DNA from: Podarcis gaigeae
Taxonomy: Eukaryota
Strand: one strand, 5' to 3'
Assembly (NCBI GenBank): GCA_964106915.2
Contig: OZ066919.1
Length of the DNA: 64,000 nucleotides
The position numbers and the translations under genes are program-made. Positions 4,171 through 36,993 of this stretch are shown here, one piece after another (the stretch's first letter is position 1; the number at the start of each line of letters is the position of its first letter). The notes below the pieces were generated by a model. The model saw nothing but the letters and a program-made list of their open reading frames with translations. It had not been told where the DNA came from and did no database searches.

Positions 4171-7100
4171 CCACACAGCTTCAGTCTGCATTCAATTGTT
4201 CTAGACCAATGGTAACGGTTTGAAAACAGAGTATGAAGAAGAAAAGGGAAATCGTTTCCCCCTCAAATGCGGAGAACACAGAAAACAAGATATTGGATTT
4301 GGAAATCCAGTGAAAACTGACACAGAACTATATTACTTAGGTATAGCTCACAGTGAGGTAGTAAGGCAGAGTTGTACCACTTTAGATTGCAGGTGAGAAA
4401 AAGATCATGCAAATGTTTCAGTTTATTCAAATAAAAAACCCTGAGGACAGAAAACTAGCATGTCAAACAAAAGCCTGTTCTTTTGCCTGCAGTGCTGGTT
4501 TTCGATGTGCAGGGATATATATTCATGTGACACGAACCAGCCTTGACATCGCTTTAACACCTCAGCAAGAACCAAGAATTAGCATGCCGCTGTGCTGATG
4601 AGCCATTCCTTCAAACCCCAGGCTTGCCAATCACACCACTGATACGTTCATCGAGGCAGAATGAACAGAATGTCTGCCTGAGACAGTCGTTCTCTAGCCT
4701 CCTGGCCCAAATATTTCCATGAGCCCATTTGCAAAAGATTTATGTTTAAATTGGAAGTTTTTCACGACTGGACGGCACAAGGCAGTGTTTGTAGAACAAA
4801 TGGCGTTTAAAAAACCCCAAGGGGCCCGGATTGGTTCAGCATCAAGCAAGACTCTTCCGTAAGCCAGCTGATGTTCTTTTAATGAGCGCTGCTCGTCAGG
4901 GATCATCCTTGCAACTTGCTGTATAAAAGAACAGTTTGCTGTGAGTTTATAAAGCAGCCTCTCTTTTGAAAGGGTTGAGACACTACACCAGCCTCAGATG
5001 TGCAAAACAGACACTTATTTGAACGGAAAGGGGGAAATGAGATGCCAGGTTTTTCCTCCCCTCGTTCCACATTATGGTTGTTGTCGCTACTATCATTATT
5101 AGTTGCCTGTCTGTTGTTTGACAGGCTGTGTTGCATCTGTGCATCACAAGCTACATTAGCTCACACGGGAAGGGAAAAAATCCTACTGGACTGTGAGCTT
5201 CAACATGGCTTAAGCAAGGAAGTGGTTCCACCAAAAGACGGCAGGTCAATGTAGGCTGCAGGTCAGCTGACATTTTCATGTGTGAAATTATCCCACTGAA
5301 ATGAGGGTCTGGTTAGGGATCTTTTGTGCTCCTTACCATTGGGATATCAAAAGGAGGTTCTGATGCAAATCAGTGTGATAAGTTCAAAGCACAAGCATGC
5401 TAATGTTCGTGTCCCCCCTCTTTTGTTGTTGTTGTCGCTTTGTGGAAACGGCGCCTTTCTTTTGCCAAATGTAGCTTTATTAATGTCAAGTTTGACAAGC
5501 GAAACTACTTTATGAATGCAGCTGTCTGAGGCTGTAGACCTGATTGCTTTCAACTAAAACCCAGTACCAGCTCTTCAGATGAGTCAAAAGCTTTTTTAAA
5601 AAATAAATAAAAAAAGACTGTAAAGAGGAATGCTTTTAGTAGCTTTGTCATTAAACTGCTTTTCACAGCTCTTAATGTTATTTGTTGCTGGAGGTTACAT
5701 TATAATCCTTTCCCCCCTTTTTTGTGCACCAGAAATAGCAACTCAATCAGTGTGCTCAAGGGCTAACATTTTCTGTGCAGAGGACCTGTGGTTTTCCCTT
5801 CCCATAGAGGTCTGAGGTTAAGTAGCAGACTTCTACCACAGACCCATATGAAGCCTTTTTTTAAAAGCTGTAGCTGAAGGATGACCGCCAAAGCCATATC
5901 TCAGTAGCCAAAAGCAGGGGCAGCACTCACCACAGGGCCTACAGCGCACCCGAGCCATACATCTCTCCTGGGAGAGACGTGGTGGCTTGGGTGCACGCAG
6001 GCTCCACACTGCCCAAACGGTCTGCCCTCTGCTTCCCCTCCCCTCATGCTGTAGGGCGGCTGAGTGGGAGGAGGCAGGCAGACTATGGAGGCCCCACGGT
6101 GTGTCCCTGCCCCTATGGACGGTTGCCCCATTCCTGGGCGTGCCGCCCCAGGCGCCCAAGTGGCTTCCTCCACCCCTGGCCAGAAGTCTCAGGTTCAATC
6201 TCTGACCTCTCCTCGAGGCCCTTAGGAGTCACTTTCTATCAGAGTAGATGATAACTGTTCTAGAATGGCAAAAAATGTGACCTGATGTAAGCAGGCCTGG
6301 CTGTGGGTTGGCTTTGGCACTAGGCAATAGTGGTTTGCATGGTGAGGGGGAGTAGGGGCAGCCACCTTGTGATGGAACGCCAAGATTTGGCACCCCTGTG
6401 GGTGCTCCACCTGCCTTGCCACCTCCACTGCTGGCAGAGAAGCAAATCTCACCAGAATCCGGCACCACCAAGCGACCTAGGTAAGGGAGGCTTAAAGCGG
6501 ACAGGGGAGCACCTTCCCGTTTCGCCTCAGGCAGCCAAACAGGACATGGCGCCCCTGAGGTGGAGCAAAGGAGCCTTCTCCCAATGCTGGGGCTACTGCA
6601 GTTTACCTGTGCTGAGGACCCACCTGGAATGAGCTGCTCTGTTCATTAGGGCTGACACTCAACCAAGTCTGTGGAGATCGTGTTTTTGCTAATAAAGAGT
6701 TATCTCTGTCTTTGAACTGTACAAAGGTAAACATTGTATTTGTTGCTCAGCCAACTTTTGCCTCCTGACCCTGCTCAGCAGTAGCATGTAGCCCTCAGAA
6801 AGTTGCCCAGAAGGGAATGAAGCCCTCTGGCTGGAAAAGATTCCCCAACCCAACTCCAATGTATGCATGCTGGGAGCAGGACTGGTTGCAATTCAGATCC
6901 TGGCACAAGCAGGATGCAGGCCTAGTTATCATGGCGGCGGCAGCAATGGGCCCTGCATGTGCCAAATAATATCACGCGCTGGCATCCTGCATGGTTGTAA
7001 GGTAGTATCCTGTGCTCTTTTGGCAACTGTTAACATTACAAATCCGGGGCCAAGGCAGACCACACACTTTTTAAAATTAAATACGTTGTTTGCTGAGTTT

Positions 7101-8556
7101 AATGAGTTCAACGAATTTAACTCGAACCCTGCAGGACACTTCTCGTTCTCTCCTGCAAAATGTGTCTTTATCAGTGTTCATATCAGTAAGATTCCCTAGA
7201 GAGAGAAAAGAATTTTACAGTCTGATCAGTTATATAATGCCCATTTACCAGTAATAAGATGAAAGCCTTGTAACAATTCTCATTTGTGTTTAAGACTTGA
7301 ATATTCATAAACAATATAAACAATAGCAGTACAGTGGAATGCAATAAAACCTCTCTCCCTGCAGCCCAGCTCCACTCTTGGATGTGAGCTGCCGGGGGGG
7401 GGGGGGGGAGACATCTCAAGTGGTAGAATACAAGGTAAGTAAGGCTGGAATGTGGGTGGGTGTTCCTTTAGAAGATGAATAGACCAAAATATCTCTAACC
7501 TTAAGCTGGGGGTGGAGAAACATTTAGTTGTCTCTGCATTTCTAAACCAACCAGCCTAATCAGTTAAATAAAAGGAAATCAGTTGAAACTATAAAATCAG
7601 AATCCAGTTAAAATGCCTGCTGGAATTTTTTTTAAGTCTTCAGTAGGTGCTGGAGGTACAACACGGAAGGGCCCTCTCTGACCTTAAGTGGATCTAATGG
7701 GGGATTTATCTTTTCTTCTCATATCCTTTGTAATCCGTTCAGATCAAAACATTTTTATCAGTGATAAGTTTAAATTAAAAACGGTGCACAAAAAAGCTAC
7801 ATCTGTCCTAGGAAAATGAGCTACCTAACTTAATACAGATTTGTTCAGAGCTTTGAACTATGAGTAATGAATCTTTCAGACAATTTATTCAAGCAGAACT
7901 GAAATAGAATCTACTTAAATACATCCAGCGGTTGTGCTAAAATCTCCTAACTTGAACAGTTCCAAGATTCGTGAACATTCTAATTGGATACAGCTACAGA
8001 AAAATGTTGTTTGACTTTAATAAAAAAAAAAGGCCGTGGAGATGACTAGAATAATAACACTTTTGACTAAAGTTTCCATCAGTGTGTGTTTAGTTGATTA
8101 ATTGCCTTTTGATTGATTAATTGCTTTATTAAGCCATGAATATCAATGCAATTGCTGTTTTGAAGATGTGTAATGAAGATAGGTTTTCAGACTAAATAAA
8201 GCAGACAAAGCATTTTTTTCCCCATCCGATTATCTCAAATTGTTCCTAAAAGAATAACATCTACCCTAAACCAGTTTCTTTAAGGAGCAACTTTAGTTTT
8301 AAATGTATGCAAATCCATATGGAATTAGGAGTTAACTGTCTTTAGTGATTAATCAGCAGCGGTTAATAGTTTGAGACTTAATTTGCAACCTTCCTTTTCT
8401 GTTGAGCCAGATTTTGTTAACCCAGCACTATCAACCCTATTCACTAGTGCTCCCAATGCTCTTAGGCAAAAGCCTTTCTTTACCTGTGTTGCTATAGCTG
8501 CCCAACAACAATGTTCTTTGAGATGAGCATTGACTCTTGACATTTTATCCACGGAA

Positions 8557-8722
8557 ACATAAGAAACTGCCTTATACTACATTGGTCAGTTGGTCCACCT
8601 GGTTCAGTACTATCTACACTGACCAGAGGCAGCTAAACAGGGTTTTCCAGAAGGGACATTCCCACCCTACCTGAGACATTCTGCATGCAAAACAGATTCT
8701 CTACCACTGAACTATTACCCTT
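8557..8722 (-). mobile_element. tRNA-derived squamate SINE (Squam3-like), degraded
   Basis: Minus strand reads tagttcagtggtagagaatctgttttgcatgcagaa...tcagtgtagatagtactgaaccaggtggaccaa...tataaggcagtttcttatg. Confidence 0.7.
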
Positions 8723-8869
8723 ACCCAGCCACTCTGTTGCTGAGCGAACTCCCCGGTGCTAAGAAATCCTGCTAGGTTTGTATCACGAGTCTTTTCATAC
8801 AAGAAAATATGGAGTCATACAATTGTAGTAGCAGTAATGGTGAAAAGCTGGGTTCTCAAGCAGTCGGTG

Positions 8870-11800
8870 GCAATTTAAATTTTTATTTCTTTACTTCCTT
8901 TTTCCATTGTTGGGGGTGGGTGGGATGGATATTTGGTTGGGGATTAATTTTAGTATAATTGTTCTGTTCCTTTTTGTTGTTGTTGTTGTTTTATTGGTTC
9001 TGTATAGTTTGTGTTTTGTTTTGAAGGGGATAGATCAGGGCTGCCTGGGAGTGGGGCCCCAGCCAACACGATGGCTGGGACAAGTTCCACAGGGGGGGAA
9101 GCACTGGGACATCCAATCTCGGTGATCATGGGCAGGAGACGGAGTTACGCTAAGACCAGACCATGTCATTACCGAGGAGGCAGGTTTAGTCGTTGTTTGA
9201 AGACTATCCCTGCGTCCAGGTCTGGCCTTGACCGGATGGATACTGGAATCAACAGGGGAAACCTACATGACCTGAAGGTGTTGCTGTGTAATGCCAGGTC
9301 AATGATGAATAAAACCACTGCCATCCACAACCTGATTGTGGATGGAGGATTTGACCTGGCATGTGTGACAGAGACCTGGTTGGAGGAAGCAGATGGGCCT
9401 GTCCTTGCCGCTGCTTGCCCACCAGCTTTCTCTTACGCACAGCAACCCAGGTCATGTGGGCGGGGAGGGGGGGTTGCAGTGATTTTTAGGAAGTCACTAG
9501 CTTGCACCAGGGAAGATCCTACTGGGAAGATCCAGTTTTCTGAGTGCATGTTCTGGAAGTTGGGCAATAGGGGCAGTACAGGATTCCTTTGGGTGTACCG
9601 ACCTCCCCGCTGCACCAAGGATTCCCTGTCTGAGCTGCTTCAGGTCGTGGCGGATTTTCTCCTGGAGACACCTAGTTTGGTTGTCCTAGGGGATTTTAAC
9701 ATCCATGCCGACACGACCTTACAAGGGGCTGCTCGGGACTTCGTGGAAAGCATGGCCTCCATGGGCTGTCCCTGAATAAGTTTGGCCCAACTCATAGTCA
9801 TGGACATGCCTTAGACCTGGTGTTCACCTCTAGTGACGTGGGTGATCTGACACTAAGTAAAAGTGAAACAAAAGAAGTGCCATGGTCAGATCACTTCCTG
9901 GTGCAACTGAACTTCTCTGCGACCCATCCCCTCTGCAGGGAGGTGGGACCAATTCGGATGGTCCGCCCCCGCCACTTAATAGATCCAAATGGTTTCCAGA
10001 GAGTGGTAGGGGATGCTTTATCCCATGTTGATGGCCTTTCAGCTGATTCCCTGGTGGCCCGCTGGAATGCGGAGTTAACCAGGGCTATCGACTGTCTGGC
10101 TCCGAAGCGCCCTCTCCGATTGCATGGAGCCTGGACAGCTCCGTGGTTTTCCTTGGAGCTGAGGGCGATGAAACAATCGCTGAGACGGCTAGAGCGTCGG
10201 TGGCAAAAAACTCACTCCGAATCTGACCGGACACAGGTTAGAGCTCAGTGTCGAGCCTACCAAGTGGTGATAGCGACGGCGAAGAAGACTTTCTTCACCG
10301 CCTCTATTGCATCTGCAGAAAATAGTAGCAGGAGACTTTTTCAGGTGGTTCGTAATTTAATGGAACCACCTTTACCACCGGGGCTTTGTAAAGACCCCAA
10401 GATCTCCTGCAACGATTTTGCAAAGTTTTTTGCAGATAAAATCACTCATATTTGGAAGGAGCTAGACACCACCGTGGGTGCAGGGCTGGGGCAGGAGAGT
10501 GCTAGAGCTCTGTCTGGTCAAGTTGCATGGAATCGATTTCAATCCATTACCCCTGAGGATGTGGACAGGCTGCTTGGACGCGTGAAACCAACCACCTGTC
10601 TCCTGGATCCTTGCCCATCCTGGCTAATAAAAGCAAGCCGGGAAGGGCTGGGCAATGGGCTCTGCGGGGTGGTGAATGCTTCCCTCTGTGAGGGAACATT
10701 CCCAGATCCGCTGAAAGAGGCGGTCATTAAACCGCTTCTTAAAAAACCATCTTTAGACCCGGCCAGTATGGCCAACTATCGCCCAGTCTCAAATCTTCCA
10801 TTCTTGGGCAAGGTGATTGAGCGCGTGGTTGCTGAACAACTCCAGGCACGCCTGGAGGATGCAGACCATTTGGATCCCTTCCAATCGGGATTCAGGCCTC
10901 ATCATGGGACTGAAACTGCCTTGGTCGCGCTGGTTGATGATCTCCAGCGAGCTAGGGACAAAGGTGAGAGTTGTTTCCTAGTTCTGCTGGATCTCTCAGC
11001 GGCCTTTGATACAATCGACCATAACATCCTTCTGGACCATCTAGAGGGGCTGGGAGCTGGGGGCACTGTTATACAGTGGTTTCGCTCCTTCCTCCTGGGC
11101 CGTGTTCAGAAAGTGGTGGTGGGGGATGAGTGTTCAGACCCCTGGGCCCTCACTTGTGGGGTGCCTCAGGGTTCCGTCCTCTCCCCCATGCTTTTTAACA
11201 TCTATATGAAGCTGCTGGGAGAGATCATCAGGGGGTTTGGACTGGGTGTCCATCAATATGCAGATGATACCCAGCTCAGAACCAGTGAAGGCGGTGAAGG
11301 TCCTGTGTGAGTGTCTGGAGGCGGTTGGAGGATGGATGACGGCTAATGGATTGAGGTTGAATCCTGACAAGACAGAAGTACTGCTTTTGGGGGACAGGGG
11401 GCGGGCTGGTGTGGAGGACTCCCTGGTCCTGAATAGGGTAACCGTGCCCCTGAAGGACCAGGTGCGCAGCCTGGGAGTCATTTTGGACTCACAGCTGTCC
11501 ATGGAGGCGCAGGTCAATTCTGTGTCCAAGGCAGCTGTCTACCAACTCCACCTGGTACGCAGGCTGAGACCCTACCTGCCCGCGGACTGTCTCGCCAGAG
11601 TGGTGCATGCTCTAGTTATCTCCCGCTTGGACTACTGCAATGCACTCTACGTGGGGCTACCTTTGAAGGTGACTCGGAAACCACAACTAATCCAGAATGC
11701 GGCAGCTAGACTGGTGACTGGGGGCGGCTGCCGAGACCACATAACACCGGTCTTGAAAGACCTACATTGGCTCCCAGTACGTTTCCGAGCACAATTCAAA

Positions 11801-12125
11801 GTGCTGGTGTTGACCTTTAAAGCCCTAAACGGCCTCGGCCCAGTATACCTGAAGGAGCGTCTCCACCCCCATCGTTCTGCCCGGACGCTGAGGTCCAGCG
11901 CCGAGGGCCTTCTGGCAGTTCCCTCATTACGAGAAGCAAAGCTACAGGGAACCAGGCAGAGGGCCTTCTCGGTAGTGGCACCCACCCTGTGGAACGCCCT
12001 CCCATCAGATGTCAAAGCGATAAATAACTACCTGACATTCAGAAGACATCTTAAGGCAGCCTTGTTCAGGGAAGTTTTTAATCTGTGATATTTTAGTGTA
12101 TTTCTGGTTTTTATGGAAGCCGCCC
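8870..12125 (+). mobile_element. L2-clade LINE, near-complete ORF2 (APE endonuclease plus RT) with two frameshifts
   Basis: APE motifs LCNARS, VTETWL, GGGVA, YRPP, GDFNIH, PTH..G.ALDLVF; RT motifs QSGFR..HGTETAL, LLDLSAAFDTIDH, GVPQGSVLSP, YADDTQL; L2 C-terminus SRLDYCNALY, HITPVLKDLHWLPV. Frameshifts near 9765 and 11277. The 5' boundary is approximate. Confidence 0.93.
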
Positions 12126-13801
12126 AAAAAATCAGACTAGCAAAATTATTCAAATGTATTTTCTGGTGAGTAAATAATGCTGTTGAATTTCACTTGCAAA
12201 TGTTGGAATGCGGGGGGGAAGGATTTGTGGATATGCTTTAATGTACACTTACTGTCAGTTTTTCAGAATACATGGCTTGTTGTGCCATAGCATTGAGGCA
12301 AGAAGAAAGCAAGAGCTTCTTTGTCATTTTACTTCAGAACTGGTATTTTGCTCTGCTATTATATGCAGGTTTATGGCTACATTCTCACAGTCATTAATAG
12401 TTCTCACAAATAGTGAAACCTGTTTCTAAACAGCTCTGCTATAAGTCCTGTAATCGAAAATGGGCTCGCGTTTCAATTTTCTCTTTGATGTTTGTCGAAG
12501 CAAAATACAGCTGTTAACGTTACTGTACATTTCAGAAAGAGTAAAGCAGGAAAACATTACTAAAAACAAGTTTCCCCTTGTCACTTATTCTGGCATGTAT
12601 TGCATATTGCTACAACATTTCTTTATTTGCCAATGGAAGCAGGGGAAATTATTTCAGCCAGCTATTTATATAGATATGTATGTTTTCCTAACAAAAAGAT
12701 CAACGTAAGCTAATGGCAAATGACTGCATGATGATTATTTTGGTCTGACCACTTTAGGTTTCATTGACATTTGGATGCTATGGGTGGACAAGGCCAGTAG
12801 GAAACAGCCTTGGGTGGTAATCCTACAAGGATGCTTATGTAAAAGGAAGAAAGGTTTTTTAAAAATCAATGCCCATAATAGTATAGCAAATTTCTGCTAA
12901 AAAGGAAAATGATTTTCATGTCAAGTTAACTTCAGTATTGTGGACCATCTTATACCCACTCCCTTGGGAGTAAACACTATTGAACATAATAGGACTTACT
13001 TCAGGGTAGACCTATCTAGGATTGCAATGTAAAATCCAGAGATGAAGACTTTTGTGTTGCAAAGCAGGAAGTCTGCACATACATTACTTTCAGTGTGAGA
13101 GATTATTATTAAAAATAGTCATGTTTGGCTATGATTACAATACATACATCACAGTAACATAAAAAGACTGCTGATATCCTACCATGGCTTTGTGGTGACT
13201 GAATATAGACTGGGGAGGATGTCTTTCCTCTGAAGTGTTCCTTGTAAATGTAATTACTTGCCACTGACCTCTAATCATTTCCCCCTTTCCCAATGCTACT
13301 GTTAGACTATCCAGCAGCTCAAGTGAAGAACTCTCCAAGAAATAGTTGTGTTTAATTCCATGAAACGTTTCTCATATTTGTTTTAAAGACTCATCAGCAG
13401 TGAACATATTCTGAACATATTTAGAACGTATTTTTAGCTGCTTCATCTATAAGAGTTCATAAAATATTGGCTGCCCTTGTAGGGACAGGGGACAGCAGCA
13501 ACAACAGTGAACCAACTGCAGCTGTTTCAAGCCATCAGAAAGCTCTTAATCCCTTGGTAAAATTCCACAACTACTAAAGTGATTCTGGCATCATTTTATC
13601 ATTATTGTGGTGAATTTAGAAACCACATTCTTGCTTGCCCCCTTCTAAGTTCTTTTAACTCTTAACAAATTACATCTCCTGGGATTCTTTGGAGGACATT
13701 GTGTGTGTTGGATGTGCTTTAAACATATAGTGTTGATCTGACCTAGTCTAACCTCCATGTAAGCTTTGTCCAAGCAAGTCAAGATGAATGCTCAATAAAC
13801 G

Positions 13802-13936
13802 TATCTGTGTATCTGAAGAAGTGTGCATGCACACGAAAGCTCATACCAAGAACTGACTTAGTTGGTCTTTAAGGTGCTACTGGAAGGATTTTTTTTTGTT
13901 TTGACTATGGCAGACCAACACGGCTACCTATCTGTA
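13802..13936 (+). mobile_element. Neptune-type PLE 3' terminal fragment (hammerhead plus tail) with 12-bp target site duplication
   Basis: Near-identical to 15343-15424 plus about 48 nt of extra tail (ttttgactatggcagaccaacacggctacc). The direct repeat GCTCAATAAACG lies at 13790-13801 and 13937-13948. Confidence 0.9.
13809..13846 (+). ncRNA. Minimal type I hammerhead ribozyme (Neptune-type)
   Basis: Helix I GUAU/AUAC; CUGAAGA 13813-13819; helix II palindrome GUGUGCAUGCACAC; GAAA; palindromic AGCU; CUC triplet ending 13842. Confidence 0.85.
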
Positions 13937-14918
13937 GCTCAATAAACGAGTTATCTAGAGGAGTCCTTTGTGTTGAAGGTGCTGCAAGACTCTTTGCTGT
14001 TTTTGCTGTCACGGGCATACAGGGCTTACCTTCTGGTAAAGGACTGTACTTACTGTGTCAAAAATCATTGAATGACTTCAGTGCCTAAAGGAGATAAGTG
14101 GTTGTAGGTGGTGTGACATCAGTACAGCTCTCCATCCAGCATGACAACAGTAACTAAATTTCCAGCCACTGAAATACAAATAGAGCTTGTGCTATATAAG
14201 CAGATGAATGATTAGGCCATGAAACTCATCTGGCAATTCAGTGGAGATCCCAAGGTCTGTGTATTGGCAGAGGTCATCAAATAAGCAGAATAGCACTTGT
14301 GTAGCATCAGTCGAATCTCTTCCTACCTGCAATTTATTTTTATTCAGTCATTTCTCAGTCATTTCAGGATCATCTTCCAGGTCTGCAAAATTGAGTTAAT
14401 AATAGGAAAGGAGGTCCCCCCCCAGCTTTCCTTAGTTTCAGAAATTGTTGTAAAAATATAGGTTTGCCATGCCCATGCACTGTTGAGATCATGCCTTTGT
14501 ACCGAGCAAATATAGGAGGAAAAGTAATATTCCACATACAGCCTTCTAGCACATCCCTGAAAATAGCCCCAGATTAAATGTGTGCAATTCAGGCTTTATC
14601 AAATAAAGACAGTAAATCATGAAACATTATGAGAGAAAGCTAAAGAGAATTTACAAGTAGCTAGCTAAATAGTAATAATAATAAATCACTGGTTGTTTAA
14701 AAAGCAAGCTGTAGAGGTCTATGAAAATTCCCAGGTGCACCAACAAGTCAAGAATAGTAGTTAAAACCAGCATGATCCAAATGGTATATGCCATCACACT
14801 ATAGGTACATGAATGGCCACTAGAATCGCTTGCACCAGACAACCTTACTTAAGTGATGAACATACCATACTCTCCTACTGGTCATCCAAACATAAGAGAT
14901 GCTTCAGTTTCCCAACAT

Positions 14919-15424
14919 ATTTATGTCCGAATAAACGGACATAAATCGGACATCAGCAATCACAAGACAGAGAAACCAGTAGGAGAACACTTCAATCTCC
15001 CAGGACATTCTATACAAGATCTCAAAGTAGCTGTTTTACTACAAAGGAATTTCAGAAATAGACTGGAAAGAGAAGCTGCTGAATTGCAACTTATCACCAA
15101 ACTTAAAACCATGGAGACACCTGGTCTGAACAAAGACCTTGGATTCTTATCTCATTATACATGACAAAGCCATTTTTCACCTTCTCACCCCTTGCTTTTT
15201 CCTGTAAGACCTATTGCAGTCGTTAAGAGTCGTCAACAGGCTCATCACAGCTATCTGCCTATCACCCATTCCCACCACCCTTCTGAGTAATACCCCTCCC
15301 CACCTTCTCACTATATAGAAGGGTCTGGAAACTTCTGTTTCAGTGTATCTGAAGAAGTGTGCATGCACACGAAAGCTCATACCAAGAACTAACTTAGTTG
15401 GTCTTTAAGGTGCTACTGGAAGGA
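14919..15424 (+). mobile_element. Neptune-type PLE 5'-truncated copy: GIY-YIG C-terminus plus pLTR
   Basis: RINGHKSDI..HKTEKPVGEHFNLPGHSIQDLKV...R.EREAAE...I.KL.T..PGLN is the C-terminal half of a Neptune-type GIY-YIG domain. The pLTR has a TATA-like ctatatagaa and a hammerhead. Confidence 0.9.
15345..15382 (+). ncRNA. Minimal type I hammerhead ribozyme (Neptune-type), identical to 13809-13846
   Basis: gtat-ctgaaga-a-gtgtgcatgcacac-gaaa-gctc-atac; predicted cleavage after 15378. Confidence 0.85.
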
Positions 15425-16968
15425 AAACACTTAATTTAAATTAGGCTTCTGCAGGAGGGCAAATGCTCTATTGGATTTCTTCCCTAGACAATTGCCAAAA
15501 GCATGTTTCTCAAGAGTTGATCGCAGAGGTCCTGGAGAACTTCAGCTTGAAGTCCAAGTAATGTGAGCCCTTTTAAATTAACTTGCACTGGCTTTGGCAA
15601 TAAATCTTCCTTTATAAATGGCCCAGGAAATATAAGCATATGATCACTGTTCTCGCAAAGGGACTTCACATATGACAGGTAGGGCTGAAAACCCCCACAG
15701 ATAACTAATTCATACCATGTTGGCCAAAATTAAAACATTAAAATTTCATAGATATAATCAGATAATGAAAAATGTTCCTTTTCATTTTAGACCTTGGAAG
15801 TTAGACGCTTCTCCTTGCTACGGCTATTGATTTAGGCTGCTGTGATTTTTACCTTCATTTTGTGGGAAAGGAACTTTCTGAAGTCAAAGGACATGAAGCA
15901 TTAACTGGACAGAGCATCAGGGAATACTCTGCTAGGGGAAATTGGCTAGAGCAAAGAGCCGGGAATGGGCCTAATTGGTCTTTTCCATCTCTTAGTCCAC
16001 TGACATGACGACAACTGTTCTGAAGTTTATTTTCAAGCAGACACGCACATAAATAACATCTGTGGGAGTCATGAGCATGTACAACAGGAAAAACAAATCT
16101 CTAAAAAGTAGAGTCAAATAAAACACATTATTCTGAGTGATCAACCTCCTCATATTTTAAGCTTGCACTCAACCAGAACTAGTTTCTCTCCACCCCCCTC
16201 TTGCTAGTTAAGTGAATTTAAGTAAAGCAGAATGAAACAGGAAATACCAGAAATACTTTAATATCCTGTACTGTTGAAACCACACAATATGGTCCATATC
16301 ACATTTGGATAGCAAAGTGGATGTGTGGGTTCTCTTGTAACCATTGAAATGAGTCATACATAGGAACACAAAAACTTTGATTTATGAGTATTGCCTTGTT
16401 TCAATAAACCAGTTAAGATGAACCACAGTTTAGGGTTCAGGGATAACCTTAAACTGCAGTTGCTCAAAGGCAAAAATTTGCACCAGAAGAGGAAATGTAA
16501 GGGAAACCCTTGTGAGCTTGAAGCTCACATAGGCTCATTCTTATAACAATAAACTATGATTTATCATTATGTTTGAGTTCAGGATTCATGTGTTGTATAG
16601 TGTAATGGTTCACCTTAGAGCTGGAAATTTTCAAATACCTCTTCATCTATATGTCTCAAACTTCAGTCTTCAAGATGGAGATAAAAATATTAGTCTACCT
16701 TACAAGGTTCTTCTAATATTTGCTAATGGTGAAGTCTGAGAGATGTTTCAAAGTTTGAGGAAGAAATTGGAACATGCATTGCCTTCATTCCAATGGATGT
16801 TTCCCTTGGAATGCAAATAATGCATTCAAACCACCTTCATCATACTTGTCTGTCCTTGGCACACAGTTAGATGTTCTGTATAAATAATAAGTATTGTCTT
16901 AATAACTCAATTATTTATTTTTTCGACATGCCATTAAGTTTAACATTTTAGGTAACACCCTTATCGTA

Positions 16969-17156
16969 AACTTGCAGCTCTTCACCTTTAGTACAAATCT
17001 GATCAGATCTTGCAAGCAAAGCATTCCAAGCCTGGTCAATACTTGGATAAGAGATCCTCAAGGGAAATGCAGGATGCTTTTTAGAAATCGTTCAATAGGC
17101 GACATTCTTTTTAAGTCAGCACAGAACCAATCATCCAGCATATGGTGATGGGAGCC
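16969..17156 (+). mobile_element. AmnSINE1-like ancient SINE (5S rRNA-derived head)
   Basis: agatcttgcaagcaaagca..gcctggtcaatacttggataagagatcc aligns by eye to the 5S rRNA box A/box C region. It continues ttcaataggcgacattct..agtcagcacagaaccaat..ccagcatatggtg, resembling the AmnSINE1 body as I recall it. Confidence 0.75.
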
Positions 17157-19319
17157 TCAAATGGAAAAAGCATGCTCCTTAAATTCCTCACCTGCCACAT
17201 CGTATCATAATGATGGAAACACAGCTTGCATGTTTTAGCTTTTAAGTTGAGAGCATTATGTGAGTTGGTGACACTGTCCCTGCGCTCGGTGACCAGCAAG
17301 TAAAACCGCAGCATGTCCTTCAAGGTGAAAGATATTGCATATGCAAAGATAGTAAGCAACACTTCAGAGCACAGTGCTAAGGTGTGCAGTTCTAAAATGC
17401 TTCATGCTGGCTTGTCCCAACATGGACCAACTCATCATAGCTTTTCTGCCAGCTGGTCATTCCTGTCCACTTTTAGTTTCATCCCCATAGTGTACCTTTC
17501 AATGTCAGTGCCACATCACTTCAGTATAGTGCCATTTAGGAGCTTTTTGCTGTGTGTATTCACTTAACACACAGCACATTACCTGCTAGACTGAGTTTGT
17601 GGCAGGGACTGCTCTGCAAAATCTAAGATCAGACCACTGTGATTGGACTGGGCCCTGGGCAGCGTAGAGACCTGAACATGAAATCACATCCAGCTTAGCC
17701 CCCTGTCCTCTGTATTTTAAATGTGCATTATAGTGCCTTACAGATGTGGCTCAAAGGGATGTTCCAAGGATAAGCAAGGCTGTTTATCCTTACAAATGCA
17801 GTATACAAAAAAAAAATCTATATGTTTATGGTTTCTAACATGAAGAGGCTACAACACTACCTATTTTGCTAGCTTTTGAGTGCCCTATTAATTTCTTTTA
17901 TTTATTTCCATACTATGGATGTGATGACTATGGAAGCCTATCTACACTTTCTGTTGTTGTTATTACATTTATATACCGCTTAGTTGACAAAGTGGCTTCT
18001 AAATGGTTTACAAGTATAAAACATTTTTTATGTTGCAGAACTGAATACAAGAATAAGCTCACTAATTTTATTCTTGAGATAAGAAGTATTTTATTCCTAA
18101 ATATTCTGGGCATTTTGAAGTGTATGGTAGTTTACTTTTTCCTTATTCTTGTGATAAATGTCAGAGCCCTGAGCCTGAAGTTGGCTTGTTTGTTCCTTTA
18201 AAAGGTAGCTGTACATAAAAAAATCCAGGTTTCTACACGCTTCATGTATTGTGTTAATATTAAACACAATTGGAGTCTGTCTGTCTTTGTACTTTTGCAA
18301 CGTCTCATTTCTTTCCAACTATAGCGCTTGTCATGGTTTTAATTTTTTTCCTCCTCCAAGTGGATCTCTTTCATGTTTTCTATTTACTCTCCTTGGCAGA
18401 GTCATTGAGCACAGGAAATACACTATATCTGCAAAATGCCAAAACGGCTTTCTTCATAGTACTGCAGTAATAGGGAACTGGATGATTTTAGGAAAAGATC
18501 TGTGCTCCGTGCTTTGCCTATTCATGTGTGGGGTTTTGATTTTATGTGAAATGAAAGGCGTAAACTCCAGGTCTGAAAACTAATAGAATTTCAGCATTTA
18601 CCTGCTGATCCATAGCCTTTAGGTTAGATTGTGTGTCAGCCGGCAGTCAGCTTGTAGAACGAAGAATACTTTAACACAAAAATGAAAAGATTTCTGTTAG
18701 ATGCGCACCACCTGCCAGATACCGAGAATGATCCTTGTGGATTATTATTAGAAATATTTTCCACTCTACCTGATTGCTGAGAAAGCCGTGGGAAGGATAC
18801 CTATTCAGATAATGCTGGCTTGTGAACCACAAGAAAGAGAATTGCTATCCTATTTTTCAGCCAAAAGTTATGCTGCTTCTTGACAAATCTTTAAAAAGTT
18901 ATTGAAAAGCAAAGTCTTCCTCAGCATCATGTGGAATCACATATTGTGCTTACGCGCATAGCTGATATTGTTTTCGTTTGTCCTATAGTATATACACTTA
19001 CGTTCATAATATACATATTAACTATCTGTTGTGATACATTTGGAAAAGACCTTCCTATAAAGAAACATACAGTACATCACACTATAAACTTATTCATCTG
19101 AACATATCTCTGTTAAGAGTTAACTGGCATCACTGTTTGCTGGCAGAACTCTATCCTAGATCTAGTCCCAGAAATAGAGATCCAGGGAAAGTCCACCTGC
19201 ACTAGATCTAACAGTGCAGCAGCACAATTTCTCGGCATCTTAAGGCAGTGGTCTGTAGGATGTGCTTCCAGCTCTCGAAGGGCCAAATTATAGGTTATGG
19301 CAGCTTTTCCATGAGTCTG

Positions 19320-19626
19320 GAGAAGGGTCATATCTCAGTGGTTAGAACCTCTGCTTTGCATGCAGTAGGTCTCAAATTCAAACCCTGGCATTTCCAAATA
19401 GGACTGGGGGAAACTCTGGAGAGCCATAAGGATGTAAGAAGAACTTGCTAGGTCGGGCCAGTGGCCCATCTAGTCCAGCATCCTGTTCTCACAGTGGCCA
19501 ACCAGATGCTATGAGAAGCCTGCAAATAGAAATCTCCCTTCCTGCTAGTTCCAGGAACTGGTATTCAGAAGCATACTGCCAGTTATGGAAGACAGTGTTG
19601 AGCTAAATGGATCAATCCTTATGTTC
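19320..19626 (+). mobile_element. Squam3-like SINE interrupted by an inverted CR1-type 3' tail (about 19425-19575)
   Basis: Head ctcagtggttagaacctctgctttgcatgcag..ttcaaaccctggcat; insert gtaagaagaacttgct..gcccatctagtccagcatcctgttctcacagtggcc; the SINE body resumes at actgccagt. Confidence 0.7.
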
Positions 19627-21080
19627 AATCTCAATCACACAGGAAGAAGGCGTGTGGTCCATTTCTATTTTTAAGAGCAAAGGGGACATGCCAGTGAGAA
19701 GATGCCTTCCTCCCATTCATGGCTCAGTTCAGTGTTTGTTAAGTGAATATACATAGCACACCTAAACACACACCAAATATACACACCTAAATGGCACTGT
19801 GTTGCAGAGATGTGATTTAGTCTTCCTCCCAGTTGCTTTTCTCTTTAGTCAAAGTTTTATGACAAACATGTCATAAAACCTTGTGGGGAAACACTTAGGG
19901 AGAGGAGCAGCACAGAGATGTCAAGGGAGAATGCCCCTATTTCTTTTAAAAGAAGGATGGGGAACGTGTAGCTCTCAAGATGTTGTGGGACTCCCAACTT
20001 CCATCAGCCCCAGCTGATGGCCAATCAGCCCCAGCTGATGGCCAATCATCAGAAATGATGGGACTTGTAGTCCAGCAACATCTGAAAAGCTACAGATTGC
20101 TCACACAGCAAAATCTCCTGGTTTCCACATAGTTGGGGGAAGATTAATATTTAAAAGCATGGATCTACTGCAGTCACTTCTAGCTTGGTTCCACTATGGT
20201 TAAACACATAGGGTGGAAGCAGTAACACAGATCCATATAAACAAAAACAGCCTGTAGATTTAAACTAGCAGATTTAAACTCAAATGCCTGCCAGGATTTG
20301 CTCCAAGGCTTACTATTCAGGCACTCTAAAGAAATTTACACTTCAAAGCCTTAAAGTGACTTCATCTCCATCTCTTACCCCTTGCAACCCGCCATGTGCC
20401 CTCAAAATCTACTTCAGAAGTTTGGGGTGCCCTCCAGAGCTGTTTTTGGGAGTGCACGGGGTACTGCAGGGTAGAGGAAAGGGAGATTAAGTCCTATTTT
20501 ACAAGCGGACAATGTTGGAATCCACCCAAAGGTGGTCTCTCCCCGCCCCCACAGTCCCAAAATAGATTTAAAGCCTTATTTTTAATGTTCTCAACAGGAA
20601 TCTCGGAAATGTCTGAGTTCTGATCTGGGGTTTCCATTTATTGTTTCGTTTAACTGTATACTTAGGACATAAAATGAAGGATTATTTCTGCTAGGTGAAA
20701 TCAATAAATAATTTATCAGTTGTCCCAGTTTGTATAGTAAATTGTAATTATCGCAATCCCTTGGTTGGCACAAGCTTATCAGACAAACAGGTTTCAAAAG
20801 CTACAGAAATGCTTCCTAAACATCAATGCAGTTACGTAATGTCAGTTGTTATGCTCTTGCCGCTCTCCTGTGTGACCAAATTGTTAATAGTTAATCTGGT
20901 GTCTCCATTAGTGGTTACCTTTGTTTCCTAGCAACAACAGTGGATAAAAAGTTGAGGCAACAGTTGCCATTTTCGAATTCAACACACTTGGCTGTGGTTA
21001 AAAATATGTTTCAGGGTTTCACCAAAACCATTTTTCTTTATAGGAAAATAAAATAAAATTATGCCTTTTAAAAGTACAGG

Positions 21081-21081
<1 letters not shown>

Positions 21082-21116
<35 letters not shown>
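21082..21116. repeat. (GATT)n microsatellite
   Basis: Seen directly in sequence. Confidence 0.97.
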
Positions 21117-21738
21117 TAAAAACAGGACTTCTAGAACCAGTTTTGTGTTTGGGAGGGGGTCAGTACAGTTCAGCATAATAACTGTAAACTTTCAAAAATC
21201 ATTTTTTATGGTCAGCAGTTTTAGAACATGCCTAGTCAGAAGGAATTTCCTTTACAGACAAAGTCATTTAGACTGCAGTTGTATGTACACTCTCCTCTGA
21301 ATAAGTCCCCTTAAACTCAGTAGAACTTACTTCATTGTAGATATTTGTAGGATTACACTGTTAATGTACTAGTTATTGGCTTGGATCCTAAGTTTCCTTC
21401 CATGGACGAAATGAATGGAACAAGACCCACTCCCCGCTAGAGAGATACTTGGGCTTAGAGATACTTTGGGGTGGAATGAATGCTATATGTCCGGTGTCTA
21501 CAAATGGAGTGAGGTGTTTCCTCCATATGTGAATGGAGGCACAGCTTAGGATCCAAGACAGTATGATTATTGCTTTTCATTATTAAAAAGGAACAGTTCA
21601 GATAATAGAAAAGGGGAGCACAGAATGTACACAGGCATCTACACCTGTGACTGATTTCTAGCTACTATCTATTTAGTTCAGGGCTAAGGCATTTAGGCTC
21701 TCCAATTGTTTAGACTCCCAACTCTCATCAACCTCAGT

Positions 21739-21963
21739 TAGGGTTGTCATACGTTGACAATTTCCCAGACATATCCAGAAGACTATGGTCAGCAGCAATG
21801 TCTGGGCGGAAATTGTCAGCATGTCCTGTAAAATGTGGACATATAGTAGTCCATGTTGGCAGTTCCTGCCGATTTCCATTTTTGTGATTTTGCCAAAAAA
21901 GCTCAACAACCTTGACAAAAACTTTATGTGTGGAATTTCACTGTTTGAAATATGGTAACCCTG
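21739..21963. mobile_element. hAT (Tip100-like) MITE nested in a palindromic MITE
   Basis: TIRs TAGGGTTGTCATA / TATGGTAACCCTG; degenerate TSD c(c/t)tcagt. The flanks are the two halves of the palindromic MITE family. Confidence 0.7.
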
Positions 21964-22177
21964 CTTCAGTCACCATGGCCAATGATCAGGGATGAGGGGA
22001 ACTGGATTCCAGCAACATCTAAGGGACCACCATTTCCCCACAATTTAATTTAATTTAACATTATCCATAATGAATTATTTAACCATCACACAAATCAATT
22101 CCTAAGATGGCTTACTGTCCGTAAAATAATAATACATAATAAATACATAATAAAATGCAAAATACATAACATCAGAT

Positions 22178-22267
22178 CATAGCTGTCAACGTTTCCCTTT
22201 TTTAAAGGGAAATTCCCTTATTCTGAATAGGATTCCTCTCAAGAAAAGGGAAAAGTTTACAGCTATG
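22178..22267. mobile_element. 90-bp hAT-type MITE
   Basis: TIRs CATAGCTGTCAAC / GTTTACAGCTATG; 8-bp TSD catcagat / aatcagat (7 of 8 match). Confidence 0.85.
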
Positions 22268-23206
22268 AATCAGATAACGAAAGTGTATCTTTAAAAAAAA
22301 AATGAGACAGCGAGAAACATACTCAAAACATGAAATACTTTGCAAATTTGTCAAGTGTCCTCCGCAGGGTTCCTTTGGCCAACTACAACTTTTTTTGTCT
22401 GTGAAATTTAATATGCTGAAGAGAGAAAGAGTATTTTTTCCCCATTATTTCATTAACGGACACTGGTACATTATTAAGTTCTAATGCCTTTCGATCATTT
22501 GAAATATTGAGCTAGTTAAACAAATTCATTGATGGATTCAGCAAGATAATTGGCTTTGTCTGACAGGATTCATGAAAGATGGCCTGACAGATAATTCTAG
22601 GCCGAACTGTTGTGAATGGTGGGGAAATAAATGACTTTATGGGCAATTCTCAGCTCACAGTCAGCCAGGTGGCTGCTTAGTAAGCCAGGTAGCTGTGTTG
22701 TGTGTGCGATGTCACAAGCTCGTGGCATCACAGGCCCACCGTGGCACCAAGCCCTCCCCCAATGTTGGGCCGAAGCCAGCACCTTTGCTTACAATCAAGT
22801 GGCATATTGTCTTTCTTGAATTAAATAAATAAAAACAACCAGCCAGAAGCCAGTATTATTTTCCAGGACAGATTAAAAATAATGAGTGTCTACAATAGAT
22901 AGAATATAAATTATGAATCAGTCTTCAGAAAGCTGAGGTAAATGGCAGTGTTATTCCCAAGCACCAAACAAAAGGAAAAACAAAAGGAAAAAATAAAGGT
23001 GAAGATTTCAAATATTGTAGGGGAAAGTTGCAGTGTATCAGTTTTAATGTAATTTTACCCTTGGCATGATAAGATTATTTACAACGTTGGTATCTTTGTA
23101 AGCGAAATGCAGCTTCAGTTTATTTTAATAAACTAATAATAATGAATAATAAATATTTGGAAACTTGGTGCAAACAGGAAGAAACCAACAGGATCCCCCT
23201 GCAATC

Positions 23207-23285
23207 TTCTTTCTTTCCTTCCTTCCTTCCTTCCTTCCTTCCTTCCTTCCTTCCTTCCTTTCTTTCTTTCTTTCTTTCTTTCTTT
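23207..23285. repeat. (TTCC)n(TTTC)n compound microsatellite
   Basis: Seen directly in sequence. Confidence 0.97.
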
Positions 23286-33585: not shown

Positions 33586-33693
33586 AATCCAGTCAGGATC
33601 CTATCTCAGTACTGGTTGGTTTACCTTAATTCTGGCTATGGATGCTTGCTACAGAATACATGTCTATGGGATGATAAATGACACCTACTGCAA
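33586..33693 (+). CDS. ST6GALNAC3: ST6GALNAC3 (alpha-N-acetylgalactosaminide alpha-2,6-sialyltransferase 3), penultimate coding exon, sialylmotif S region
   Basis: Acceptor ttttacag at 33585 and donor aa|gtaag at 33694 bound a 108-bp exon. It translates (R)IQSGSYLSTGWFTLILAMDACYRIHVYGMINDTYC(K), which matches the ST6GALNAC3 sialylmotif S. Phase is compatible with the next exon (AA+G = Lys). The exon is not in the ORF track. Confidence 0.95.
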
Positions 33694-36806: not shown

Positions 36807-36993
36807 GTCAGAAGGCTTTAGGAAAGTTCCTTATCACTATTATGAGCCTGGAAGAGATGAATGTGATGAGTACTTTCTGCATGAAAATGCACCCTATGGA
36901 GGTCACAGGTTTATCACAGAAAAAAAAGTGTTTGCTGACTGGGCTAAGAGGCGCACGATAACATTTACACATCCTAACTGGACATTGTCATGA
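36807..36993 (+). CDS. ST6GALNAC3: ST6GALNAC3 last coding exon (motif III / sialylmotif VS region)
   Basis: Polypyrimidine tract plus ttccag acceptor ending at 36806. Translates SEGFRKVPYHYYEPGRDECDEYFLHENAPYGGHRFITEKKVFADWAKRRTITFTHPNWTLS*. The PYHYYE, HRFITEK and HPNWTLS motifs are characteristic of the ST6GALNAC3 C-terminus. Confidence 0.96.

What the first reader, a model, noticed from the sequence alone, without database searches (positions are those of the whole stretch)
13809..15382. Two identical minimal hammerheads 1536 nt apart in the sense strand of the host intron: possible dimer-dependent excision and circularisation module
Seen: two separate Neptune-type insertions (the first has its own TSD) place identical 38-nt hammerheads in direct orientation on the ST6GALNAC3 sense strand, with predicted cuts after 13842 and 15378. 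Known: PLE minimal hammerheads have a vestigial palindromic helix III (here AGCU) and cleave poorly as monomers but better as dimers, leaving 5'-OH and 2',3'-cyclic phosphate ends that RtcB-type ligases can join. Inference: the pre-mRNA recreates a pLTR-to-pLTR architecture by chance. It could cut the intron and release 13843-15378, which includes about 1 kb of non-element intron, as a linear or circular retrozyme-like RNA that might be mobilised in trans.
Basis: partly seen in the sequence, partly recalled or inferred. Interest (0 to 1): 0.8.

Follow-up and report, generated by a model that had tools for sequence, protein, structure and literature searches.

The report
Two stray Penelope hammerheads in intron
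Two short, recently inserted fragments of a very abundant lizard "jumping gene" (a Penelope-like element), each carrying an intact copy of a tiny self-cutting RNA motif, lie 1.5 kb apart in an intron of ST6GALNAC3; the motifs are real, but the pairing looks like chance and nothing shows that they cut out or circularise the RNA between them.

Summary
Observation confirmed. Identical 38-nt minimal type-I hammerheads lie at 13809-13846 and 15345-15382 on the + strand, with predicted cuts after 13842 and 15378. They are the only two in the 64-kb window.

They belong to two separate 5'-truncated Penelope-like element (PLE) insertions:
- 13802-13936: 135 nt, hammerhead plus tail, perfect 12-nt TSD.
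- 14922-15427: 506 nt, endonuclease-like ORF end, 3'UTR and hammerhead; no tail, no TSD.

The 985-nt spacer is unique intron DNA. The host is ST6GALNAC3 on the + strand (exons at 33586-33693 and 36807-36993), so the motifs are sense-intronic as claimed.

In three congeners 0.6-2.4% diverged, homology breaks exactly at 13937, 14921 and 15428. Both insertions are therefore young and lineage-specific. The element parts are enormously repeated there.

The excision and circle module has no support:
- No RNA run of this species was available.
- The tail-less second hammerhead is predicted to be mostly misfolded.
- The dimer helix is only 4 bp.
- Published PLE hammerheads cleave poorly without the element's protein.

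The scan has noted this hammerhead family many times elsewhere in this genome, and three follow-ups judged such copies ordinary. Verdict: ordinary, known kind, low interest.

The parts
13790..13801 (.). Left copy of the 12-nt target-site duplication (gctcaataaacg) of insertion 1
   Evidence: Read directly; identical to 13937-13948.
13802..13936 (+). Insertion 1: 135-nt extremely 5'-truncated PLE 3' end (hammerhead plus 3' region plus tail)
   Evidence: Bounded by the perfect TSD. Contigs of three congeners start matching exactly at 13937. Summed contig depth is 1e5-1e6 here against about 10-100 in the flanks.
13809..13846 (+). Hammerhead 1 (minimal type I). Helix I GUAU/AUAC, core CUGAAGA, extra A at 13820, helix II 13821-13834, GAAA, AGCU at 13838-13841, C17 at 13842 (cut after 13842).
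   Evidence: The fold shows helices I and II. Features match PMC4209133.
13889..13936 (+). PLE tail: a T-run followed by the AC-rich GACCAACACGGCUACC; present only in insertion 1
   Evidence: single copy in the window. It pairs with UUGGUCUU at 13861-13868 in the fold. The tail concept and internal RT start sites are described in PMC11167929.
13937..13948 (.). Right copy of the TSD of insertion 1
13937..14921 (.). Unique intron spacer (985 nt), not part of any element copy
   Evidence: One contig per congener lies on 13937-14921 (to 14874 in X17, where that contig ends), at the same depth as the unique flanks: 8.9 vs 11.5/6-7, 115.6 vs 125/110, and 9.0 vs 11.4.
14922..15427 (+). Insertion 2: 506-nt 5'-truncated PLE fragment (end of the endonuclease-like ORF, 3'UTR, hammerhead, 42 nt of 3' region); no tail and no TSD
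   Evidence: Contigs of X3 and X10 stop matching at 14921, and those of all three congeners start again at 15428. Depth is 1e4-1e6. It shares the 88-nt repeat with insertion 1.
14929..15164 (+). Remnant of the C-terminal end of the PLE ORF (RINGHKSDI...GH...), in frame to a stop at 15162-15164
   Evidence: ORF listed. It aligns in register with the GIY-YIG region of the other PLE in the window, but only at E 0.12. Pfam gave no hit.
15345..15382 (+). Hammerhead 2, identical to hammerhead 1; C17 at 15378 (cut after 15378)
   Evidence: In its local context helix I probability is 0-0.013.
33586..33693 (+). Penultimate coding exon of ST6GALNAC3 (…GSYLSTGWFTLILAMDACYRIHVYGMINDTYC-), AG acceptor and GTAAGA donor
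   Evidence: matches the N-terminal part of the bird SIA7C partial protein P0005.
36807..36993 (+). Terminal coding exon of ST6GALNAC3 (…VPYHYYE…HPNWTLS, then stop)
   Evidence: It is 89-90% identical over its full length to SIA7C sialyltransferase partials (E about 1e-33).

Best explanation
These are two independent, recent, dead-on-arrival insertions of the 3' end of one very abundant lizard Penelope-like element family. They landed 1 kb apart, in the same orientation, in the ST6GALNAC3 intron that precedes the penultimate exon. Each was made by target-primed reverse transcription of an element RNA that had NOT been cut at its hammerhead, because the cDNA runs across the cleavage site. Each therefore carries an intact minimal hammerhead, which is intact because the copies are young and not because this locus selects for it. 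Insertion 1 is a complete hammerhead-plus-tail unit with a 12-nt TSD. Insertion 2 is a longer fragment that lacks the tail and a TSD, and it replaces sequence that congeners have at that place. The hammerhead-to-hammerhead layout is a by-product of element density, perhaps helped by the known tendency of PLEs to insert near other PLEs. In the pre-mRNA the two motifs are most likely inert, or at most cut rarely, and the intron is removed by splicing as usual. Shown: anatomy, identity, orientation, youth, abundance. Inferred: inactivity and chance.
For: - Motifs: identical, and the only two in the window.
- Insertion 1: perfect TSD.
- Spacer: single-copy, and collinear with contigs of three congeners whose homology breaks exactly at 13937, 14921 and 15428. 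Both insertions are therefore absent in species only 0.6-2.4% diverged.
- Abundance: 7,000-27,000 contigs per run lay on the element parts, at summed depth 1e5-1e6 against about 10-100 in the flanks. The scan holds 147 notes mentioning hammerheads in 396 windows of this genome, and one more copy lies 4 kb beyond this window.
- Natural arrangement: the family's own head-to-tail junction (13936, then ACTG, then 13809) appears in congener DNA, giving a unit of about 132 nt rather than 1.5 kb.
- Folding: hammerhead 2 has an HHR-competent fraction of 4e-5 to 2e-3, against 0.16 for hammerhead 1. The AGCU/AGCU duplex is worth -3.9 kcal/mol, and its pairing probability in the 1671-nt RNA is about 1e-9.
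- Literature: PLE min-HHRs have low activity even as dimers (PMC4209133, PMC6765202). The Anolis PLE hammerhead needs the PLE protein, unprocessed RNA is the main insertion substrate, and no RNA-seq reads end at the cut site (PMC11167929). PLEs tend to insert next to existing copies (PMC6765202).
Against: - With only two copies in 64 kb, the chance that they fall within 1.5 kb in the same orientation is about 2-3% for this window taken alone. It is unremarkable only after allowing for the hundreds of windows scanned, and for PLE clustering.
- Both hammerheads are fully intact, sense to a transcribed gene, and separated by a distance inside the natural range for full-length PLEs (pLTR to pLTR, about 3 kb). 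Occasional cleavage therefore cannot be excluded.
- No RNA of this species was examined.
- The folding numbers are equilibrium secondary-structure predictions with non-significant z-scores.
Confidence: 0.85

Rival explanations
1. In the ST6GALNAC3 pre-mRNA the two hammerheads pair through AGCU into a double hammerhead. Both sites are cut, and 13843-15378 is released with 5'-OH and 2',3'-cyclic phosphate ends. It is then circularised by an RtcB-type ligase, and possibly copied by a PLE reverse transcriptase that starts in the tail at 13889-13936.
For: Both cores are intact and identical, and sense to the gene. Dimer-dependent cleavage and RtcB ligation are documented for related animal hammerheads (PMC7229834, PMC4209133). 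The excised RNA would contain the tail, and PLE RT starts internally (PMC11167929), so a circle could in principle be copied all the way round.
Against: - There is no RNA evidence. The only RNA-like run (X18) is from another organism and shows one 201-nt contig in the spacer and no joint.
- The spacer is single-copy in congeners, although they lack the insertions, so this says little.
- Hammerhead 2 is predicted to be misfolded, and the 4-bp helix III is marginal.
- Closing a 1.5-kb loop rather than the natural 132-nt loop costs roughly 2.6 kcal/mol more (polymer-theory estimate; inference).
- PLE hammerheads are slow and protein-assisted (PMC11167929).
- As a linear RNA, the fragment would have the RT start region at its 5' end and would yield only a cDNA shorter than 100 nt.
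Confidence: 0.05
2. The proximity is not chance. The second insertion was attracted by the first, through PLE endonuclease self-targeting or preference for a local hotspot. The pair is then a nascent PLE cluster rather than an accident, still with no RNA-level function.
For: [quoted passage not shown] Taken alone, the window gives only a 2-3% chance of this spacing and orientation (just two family copies in 64 kb). A further copy lies 4 kb beyond the window.
Against: The two insertions are 985 nt apart and not abutting. Insertion 2 is not at or in the tail of insertion 1. The order of the two events is unknown. Insertion 2 has no TSD and comes with a replacement of sequence, which looks like an aberrant event and not a targeted one.
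Confidence: 0.15
3. A single complex event or rearrangement. Both hammerhead-bearing pieces would derive from one tandem PLE insertion, later split or rearranged, and not from two independent insertions.
For: PLE insertions are typically tandem or partial-tandem (PMC6765202). Insertion 2 lacks a TSD. The 9-mer AATAAACG occurs both in the TSD of insertion 1 and at the 5' edge of insertion 2.
Against: Insertion 1 has its own perfect 12-nt TSD immediately around 135 nt. The 985-nt spacer is ordinary single-copy intron DNA, present in congeners with breaks exactly at the element edges.
Confidence: 0.03

Closest known systems
Minimal hammerhead ribozymes of metazoan Penelope-like elements (Cervera & de la Peña 2014, PMC4209133; dimer cleavage: Lünse, Weinberg & Breaker, cited in PMC6765202)
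   Same: Type-I topology and a complete catalytic core. There is an extra nucleotide between A9 and G10.1, a G10.1-C11.1 pair, a long helix II, no helix III loop, and palindromic A-G-C-U at 15.1-16.1. The motif lies at the element's 3' end or pLTR, on the element's sense strand.
   Different: Nothing essential. Helix I is short (4 bp). Helix II together with its loop is a perfect 14-nt palindrome. Rfam hammerhead models do not detect the motif.
Anolis carolinensis Poseidon element PAc (Frangieh et al. 2024, PMC11167929)
   Same: A lizard PLE with a hammerhead in the pLTR and an optional 'tail', explained by internal RT start sites in an AC-rich stem-loop. Insertion 1 has such a tail and insertion 2 does not. 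Insertions are made from uncleaved RNA.
   Different: This is a different family. The endonuclease-like remnant here aligns to the Poseidon-type ORF in the window only at E 0.12. Here the ATG in loop II opens no ORF, whereas in PAc the ORF starts at the start of stem II. The tail here is about 48 nt, against 30-40 bp.
Animal non-LTR retrozymes (Cervera & de la Peña 2020, PMC7229834; Li, Clavereau & Pollet 2026 preprint, 10.64898/2026.07.22.740005)
   Same: Two direct hammerheads would bracket an RNA that could be cut at both ends and ligated into a circle. Retrozymes are thought to derive from PLE pLTRs.
   Different: Retrozymes are tandem arrays of one 51-972 bp unit and are mobilised as such. 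Here there are two separate insertions around 985 nt of unique host intron. The region shows no tandem unit, no extra copies and no circRNA evidence.

Membership tests
Hammerhead ribozyme, PLE minimal type I | Conserved core C3-U4-G5-A6-N7-G8-A9 ... G12-A13-A14 ... A15.1/U16.1-H17 | tested here: met
   CUGAAGA, GAAA and AGCU-C are present in both copies.
Hammerhead ribozyme, PLE minimal type I | Helix II closed by G10.1-C11.1, with one extra nucleotide between 9 and 10.1 (PMC4209133) | tested here: met
   The extra A is at 13820/15356. Helix II GUGUG(C)/(G)CACAC lies at 13821-13834, with pair probability of at least 0.95 for the isolated motif.
Hammerhead ribozyme, PLE minimal type I | No helix III loop; palindromic 15.1-16.1 tetranucleotide allowing a dimeric helix III | tested here: met
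   AGCU at 13838-13841 and 15374-15377. The duplex energy is only -3.9 kcal/mol.
Hammerhead ribozyme, PLE minimal type I | Helix I formed by the sequences flanking the core | tested here: met
   GUAU/AUAC, 4 bp. Probability is 0.8-0.96 for hammerhead 1 in context, but 0-0.013 for hammerhead 2 in context.
Hammerhead ribozyme, PLE minimal type I | Self-cleavage at C17 | not testable with these tools
   Needs in vitro transcription or end-specific RNA sequencing.
Rfam hammerhead families (covariance models) | Match to an Rfam hammerhead model | tested here: not met
   No hit at the gathering threshold in the window, and none at E<=10 in 13700-15500. My reading: this is expected for motifs that lack helix III.
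Penelope-like element (PLE) | GIY-YIG endonuclease ORF upstream of the 3' hammerhead, on the same strand | tested here: inconclusive
   An 80-aa in-frame remnant (RINGHKSDI..GH..) is present. Pfam gave no hit. It aligns in register with the GIY-YIG region of the window's other PLE at E 0.12.
Penelope-like element (PLE) | 5'-truncated copies with a TSD and an optional 3' tail; very high copy number | tested here: met
   12-nt TSD and tail in insertion 1. Thousands of contigs in the congeners carry the element.
Neptune clade of PLEs | RT/EN phylogeny and clade-specific motifs | not tested
   Only the last ~80 codons of the ORF are present, and no reference sequences were available.
Animal non-LTR retrozyme | Tandem repeats of one short hammerhead-bearing unit, inserted as a unit | tested here: not met
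   Two separate insertions. The 985-nt spacer is unique host DNA that congeners carry without the insertions.
Animal non-LTR retrozyme | Expressed as linear and circular RNA of unit length | not testable with these tools
   No RNA run of the window's species was on offer. Contigs of another organism's RNA-like run show no joint.

The most novel reading that the evidence does not exclude
Two solo PLE hammerheads that landed by chance around host DNA do act as a cis-dimer in the ST6GALNAC3 pre-mRNA. They would release a 1536-nt RNA carrying 985 nt of intron. This RNA would be ligated into a circle, and a PLE reverse transcriptase starting in the tail could copy it. That would be a snapshot of how a new retrozyme family, or a transduction of host sequence, is born.
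Probability: 0.03. Interest if true: 0.6.

Novelty: already known. Interest (0 to 1): 0.13.

Why it matters
As it stands this is routine repeat annotation: two young copies of a known, hyper-abundant hammerhead-bearing retroelement in an intron. It is useful mainly as a calibration point. Intact PLE hammerheads are so common in this lizard genome that same-strand pairs within a few kb must occur many times by chance, so such pairs should not be flagged one at a time. If the excision idea were true, it would show how retrozyme-like circular RNAs can capture host sequence. That question is better addressed genome-wide than at this locus.

Tried and rejected
- Rfam at the gathering threshold and at E<=10: no hammerhead hit, only three chance sRNA/snoRNA matches.
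- Pfam on the 61-aa exon and on the 103-aa endonuclease-like ORF: nothing.
- ESM Atlas and PDB sequence searches with the terminal exon: nothing. The gene was then identified with the word-index protein search.
- The look-up of encoding contigs with three spacer ORFs, hoping to fetch orthologous or transduced loci: not on record.
- Scan for decayed family copies in the window using the tail and 3'-region probes: only the two known copies. One pattern search used the wrong spacer length and is void.
- The Lünse et al. dimer paper is not held and is cited only through PMC6765202.
- I considered a domain-swapped dimer through the palindromic helix II as an active form. It is the predicted equilibrium structure (-33.7 against -13.6 kcal/mol). 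I rejected it because it puts the two AGCU segments at opposite ends of a 14-bp helix.
- I considered a single tandem insertion; the TSD and the single-copy spacer rule it out.
- I did not lay a run of the window's own species. Reads were laid on three congeners and the RNA-like run, so the spacer's copy number in this species remains unmeasured.

Full report
**1.

The 41-mer GTGTATCTGAAGAAGTGTGCATGCACACGAAAGCTCATACC occurs exactly twice in the window, at 13807-13847 and 15343-15383 on the + strand. None is expected in shuffles. A looser core pattern gives the same two sites.

I also ran a structural descriptor on both strands of all 64 kb. It required helix I of at least 4 bp, CUGANGA, helix II of at least 3 bp, GAAA and UH.

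The repeat extends to 88 nt, 13801-13888 and 15337-15424, at 97% identity and 1536 nt spacing. The copies differ only at 13803/15339, 13806/15342 and 13855/15391.

In hammerhead numbering the motif reads:
- helix I: GUAU/AUAC
- core: C3-U4-G5-A6-A7-G8-A9
- one extra A
- helix II: GUGUG(CAUG)CACAC, closed by G10.1-C11.1
- G12-A13-A14
- A15.1-G-C-U16.1
- C17

The cuts would therefore fall after 13842 and 15378, and the released fragment 13843-15378 would be 1536 nt.

**2. Anatomy of the two insertions**

*Insertion 1* is 13802-13936, 135 nt. It is flanked by a perfect 12-nt duplication, gctcaataaacg, at 13790-13801 and 13937-13948. It consists of the hammerhead, a 3' region, and a tail at 13889-13936 made of a T-run followed by the AC-rich GACCAACACGGCUACC.

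*Insertion 2* is 14922-15427, 506 nt. It starts inside an ORF remnant (…RINGHKSDISNHK…GEHFNLPGHS…, stop at 15162-15164). It continues through a 3'UTR and the hammerhead, and stops 42 nt after the hammerhead. It has no tail and no TSD.

The ORF remnant aligns in register with the GIY-YIG region of the other PLE in the window, the Poseidon-type ORF at 1625-2656 on the minus strand. That ORF has a weak Pfam GIY-YIG match at E 8e-4, below the curated cut-off. The alignment between the two reaches only E 0.12, and Pfam finds nothing in the remnant itself.

Rfam's hammerhead models do not detect the motif even at E<=10. In my reading this is expected for motifs that lack helix III.

**3. Host gene and strand**

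The stretch 36807-36993 on the + strand is preceded by a polypyrimidine tract and an AG. It encodes …VPYHYYE…GGHRFITEKKVF…HPNWTLS followed by a stop. It is 89-90% identical over its full length to bird 'SIA7C sialyltransferase' partial proteins (E about 1e-33). It also matches lungfish 'alpha-N-acetylgalactosaminide alpha-2,6-sialyltransferase 3-like'.

The N-terminal residues of those partial proteins led to the preceding exon at 33586-33693 on the + strand, which has an AG acceptor and a GTAAGA donor.

No further sialyltransferase motifs occur upstream in the window. The hammerhead pair therefore lies, in sense, in the intron before the penultimate exon, about 18 kb upstream of that exon's acceptor.

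**4. Evidence from related genomes**

The spacer is held by DNA runs of eight coded organisms, with word shares from 0.96 down to 0.47. I laid contigs of three of them (X3, X10, X17), plus one RNA-like run of another organism (X18), on 13400-15800 at a minimum of 85% likeness. Five things follow.

(a) *The element parts are enormously repeated.* Between 7,210 and 26,957 contigs per DNA run were laid. Summed depth was 1e5-1e6 over 13805-13966 and 14939-15424, against about 9-125 in the spacer and flanks.

(b) *The spacer is single-copy in these species.* One contig per species lies on 13937-14921 (to 14874 in X17, where that contig ends). Its depth equals that of the unique flanks.

| Run | Spacer depth | Flank depth |
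|---|---|---|
| X3 | 8.9 | 11.5 upstream, 6-7 downstream |
| X10 | 115.6 | 125 upstream, 110 downstream |
| X17 | 9.0 | 11.4 |

Mismatches of 0.6-2.1% agree with the word shares.

(c) *Homology to the window breaks at the element edges.* The spacer contigs begin matching at 13937 in all three species. In X3 and X17, 38 further letters upstream of that point do not lie on the tail. In X3 and X10 the match ends at 14921; the X3 contig runs on for 1108 more letters that lie nowhere on the window, and the X10 contig for 126. The downstream contigs of all three begin matching at 15428, after 152, 76 and 294 unlike letters.

My reading is that both insertions are absent from these close congeners, and that something else (at least about 1.3 kb in X3) sits where insertion 2 is. 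Insertion 2 thus came with a replacement or deletion of target DNA, which fits its missing TSD. The caveat is that the tool lists only some pieces and joints, so I did not see the empty-site joint for insertion 1 directly.

(d) *The family's natural arrangement is much tighter.* Back-joints in the DNA contigs, such as 13936, then ACTG, then 13809, show a head-to-tail arrangement with a unit of about 132 nt, not 1.5 kb.

(e) *The RNA-like run says almost nothing about this locus.* X18 gives one 201-nt contig inside the spacer (14397-14593) and no joint. It comes from a different organism that may lack the insertions. No RNA run of the window's own species was offered.

**5. Could the pair work as proposed?**

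*Points in favour.* Both cores are intact and sense to a transcribed gene. Dimer-dependent cleavage and RtcB-type circularisation are documented for related animal hammerheads (PMC7229834). A spacing of 1.5 kb lies within the hammerhead-to-hammerhead distance of full-length PLEs, which are about 3 kb (PMC6765202).

*Points against.*

(i) In its local context hammerhead 1 keeps helices I and II, with an HHR-competent fraction of about 0.16. Hammerhead 2 does not: helix I probability is 0-0.013 and the competent fraction is 4e-5 to 2e-3. Its 5' half pairs with the downstream UCUUUAAGGUGCUACUGGAAGG.

In insertion 1 the start of that downstream segment (UUGGUCUU, 13861-13868) is instead paired with the AC-rich tail strand, which is why the hammerhead stays free. 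Without the tail, copy 1 misfolds in the same way (90-nt fold). So the tail-less copy is predicted to be the weak partner.

(ii) The only dimer-specific pairing, AGCU/AGCU, is worth -3.9 kcal/mol. Its pair probability in the full 1671-nt RNA is about 1e-9. At equilibrium the two palindromic helix II strands pair with each other instead, over 14 bp at -25 kcal/mol. That geometry keeps the two AGCU segments apart.

These are equilibrium secondary-structure predictions. Co-transcriptional folding would favour the local hairpins.

(iii) By a Jacobson-Stockmayer estimate, closing a 1.5-kb loop rather than a 132-nt loop costs roughly 2.6 kcal/mol more. This is inference, not a tool result.

(iv) PLE min-hammerheads cleave poorly in vitro even as dimers (PMC4209133, PMC6765202). 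The Anolis PAc hammerhead is protein-assisted. [quoted passage not shown]

(v) Both insertions here contain the uncut hammerhead followed by 3' sequence. Their own template RNAs were therefore not cleaved at that site.

**6. What mobilisation would look like**

As a linear RNA, 13843-15378 would carry the RT start region (the tail) at its 5' end. It could template only a cDNA of less than 100 nt.

Only a circle could be copied through the spacer. The product would read: spacer 3' end, insertion 2, one reconstituted hammerhead, tail. Most 5'-truncated progeny would be indistinguishable from ordinary family copies.

The 15378|13843 junction itself is the normal family sequence. Short-read junction searches are therefore uninformative, and primers or probes must sit in the unique spacer.

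**7. Chance**

The window holds just two copies of this family. For two random copies in 64 kb, the chance of the same orientation within 1.5 kb is about 2-3%.

That is small for one window. It is expected several times among the hundreds of windows scanned, and PLEs are reported to cluster (PMC6765202). The scan's notebook lists 147 hammerhead notes in 396 windows of this genome, and another solitary copy lies 4 kb beyond this window.

Three earlier follow-ups on other loci called such copies ordinary and found no circle. These are leads and not independent evidence, but they agree with what I measured.

**8. Verdict**

The element and its ribozyme are of an already described kind.

The excision and circularisation module is unsupported, and on indirect grounds unlikely (about 3-5%). 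It is not experimentally refuted. Interest is low.

Noticed in passing
window 33586-33693 and 36807-36993 (+): The last two coding exons of ST6GALNAC3 (SIA7C) lie in the window. The terminal exon is 89-90% identical to bird orthologue fragments.
   Followed up: yes
window 14921/14922 and 15427/15428: In three congeners the contigs run on with unlike sequence at both edges of insertion 2 (1108 nt beyond 14921 in X3; 76-294 nt before 15428). The PLE fragment therefore seems to replace at least about 1.3 kb of ancestral intron instead of simply interrupting it, which fits the missing TSD.
   Followed up: partly
window about 13643-13804 (and perhaps 13937-14047): A moderately repeated older element surrounds insertion 1. 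Summed contig depth is 30-200 times that of the unique flanks, and congener contigs end at 13773-13778. It was not identified.
   Followed up: no
window 13821-13834 and 15357-15370: Helix II plus its loop (GUGUGCAUGCACAC) is a perfect 14-nt palindrome. Any two copies are therefore predicted to form a 14-bp intermolecular duplex (-25 kcal/mol) instead of two hairpins. This is the equilibrium fold of the whole 1671-nt RNA.
   Followed up: partly
window 13936 joined back to 13809, and 13936 joined to 15381 (joints in congener DNA contigs): Other genomic copies join the tail end (plus ACTG or ACTGG) directly to the start of helix I, giving a natural tandem unit of about 132 nt. One contig joins the tail (plus ACTGGA) to a position 2 nt past the hammerhead cut site. 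That could be a copy made from cleaved RNA, but it rests on a single contig with a 20-nt side.
   Followed up: no
window 13793-13798, 13940-13945, 14930-14935: The TSD of insertion 1 contains AATAAA, so the insertion duplicated a poly(A)-signal hexamer in the sense intron. The 9-mer AATAAACG recurs at the 5' edge of insertion 2. This is probably coincidence or microhomology.
   Followed up: no
window 13805-13966 versus 14939-15343, run X18: In the RNA-like run of another organism, the bins covering the hammerheads, the 3' region and the tail (13805-13966; also 15344-15424) have 10-25 times more summed contig depth than the ORF and 3'UTR part of the element. This suggests that short hammerhead-tail units dominate what is transcribed or carried in transcripts. 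Contig depth is a poor measure.
   Followed up: no
window 1625-2656 (-) and 2750-3508 (+): A different, Poseidon-type PLE forms a large inverted repeat; its ORF has a weak GIY-YIG match (Pfam E 8e-4). My hammerhead descriptor finds no intact motif in it. This element was already noted by the first stage.
   Followed up: partly
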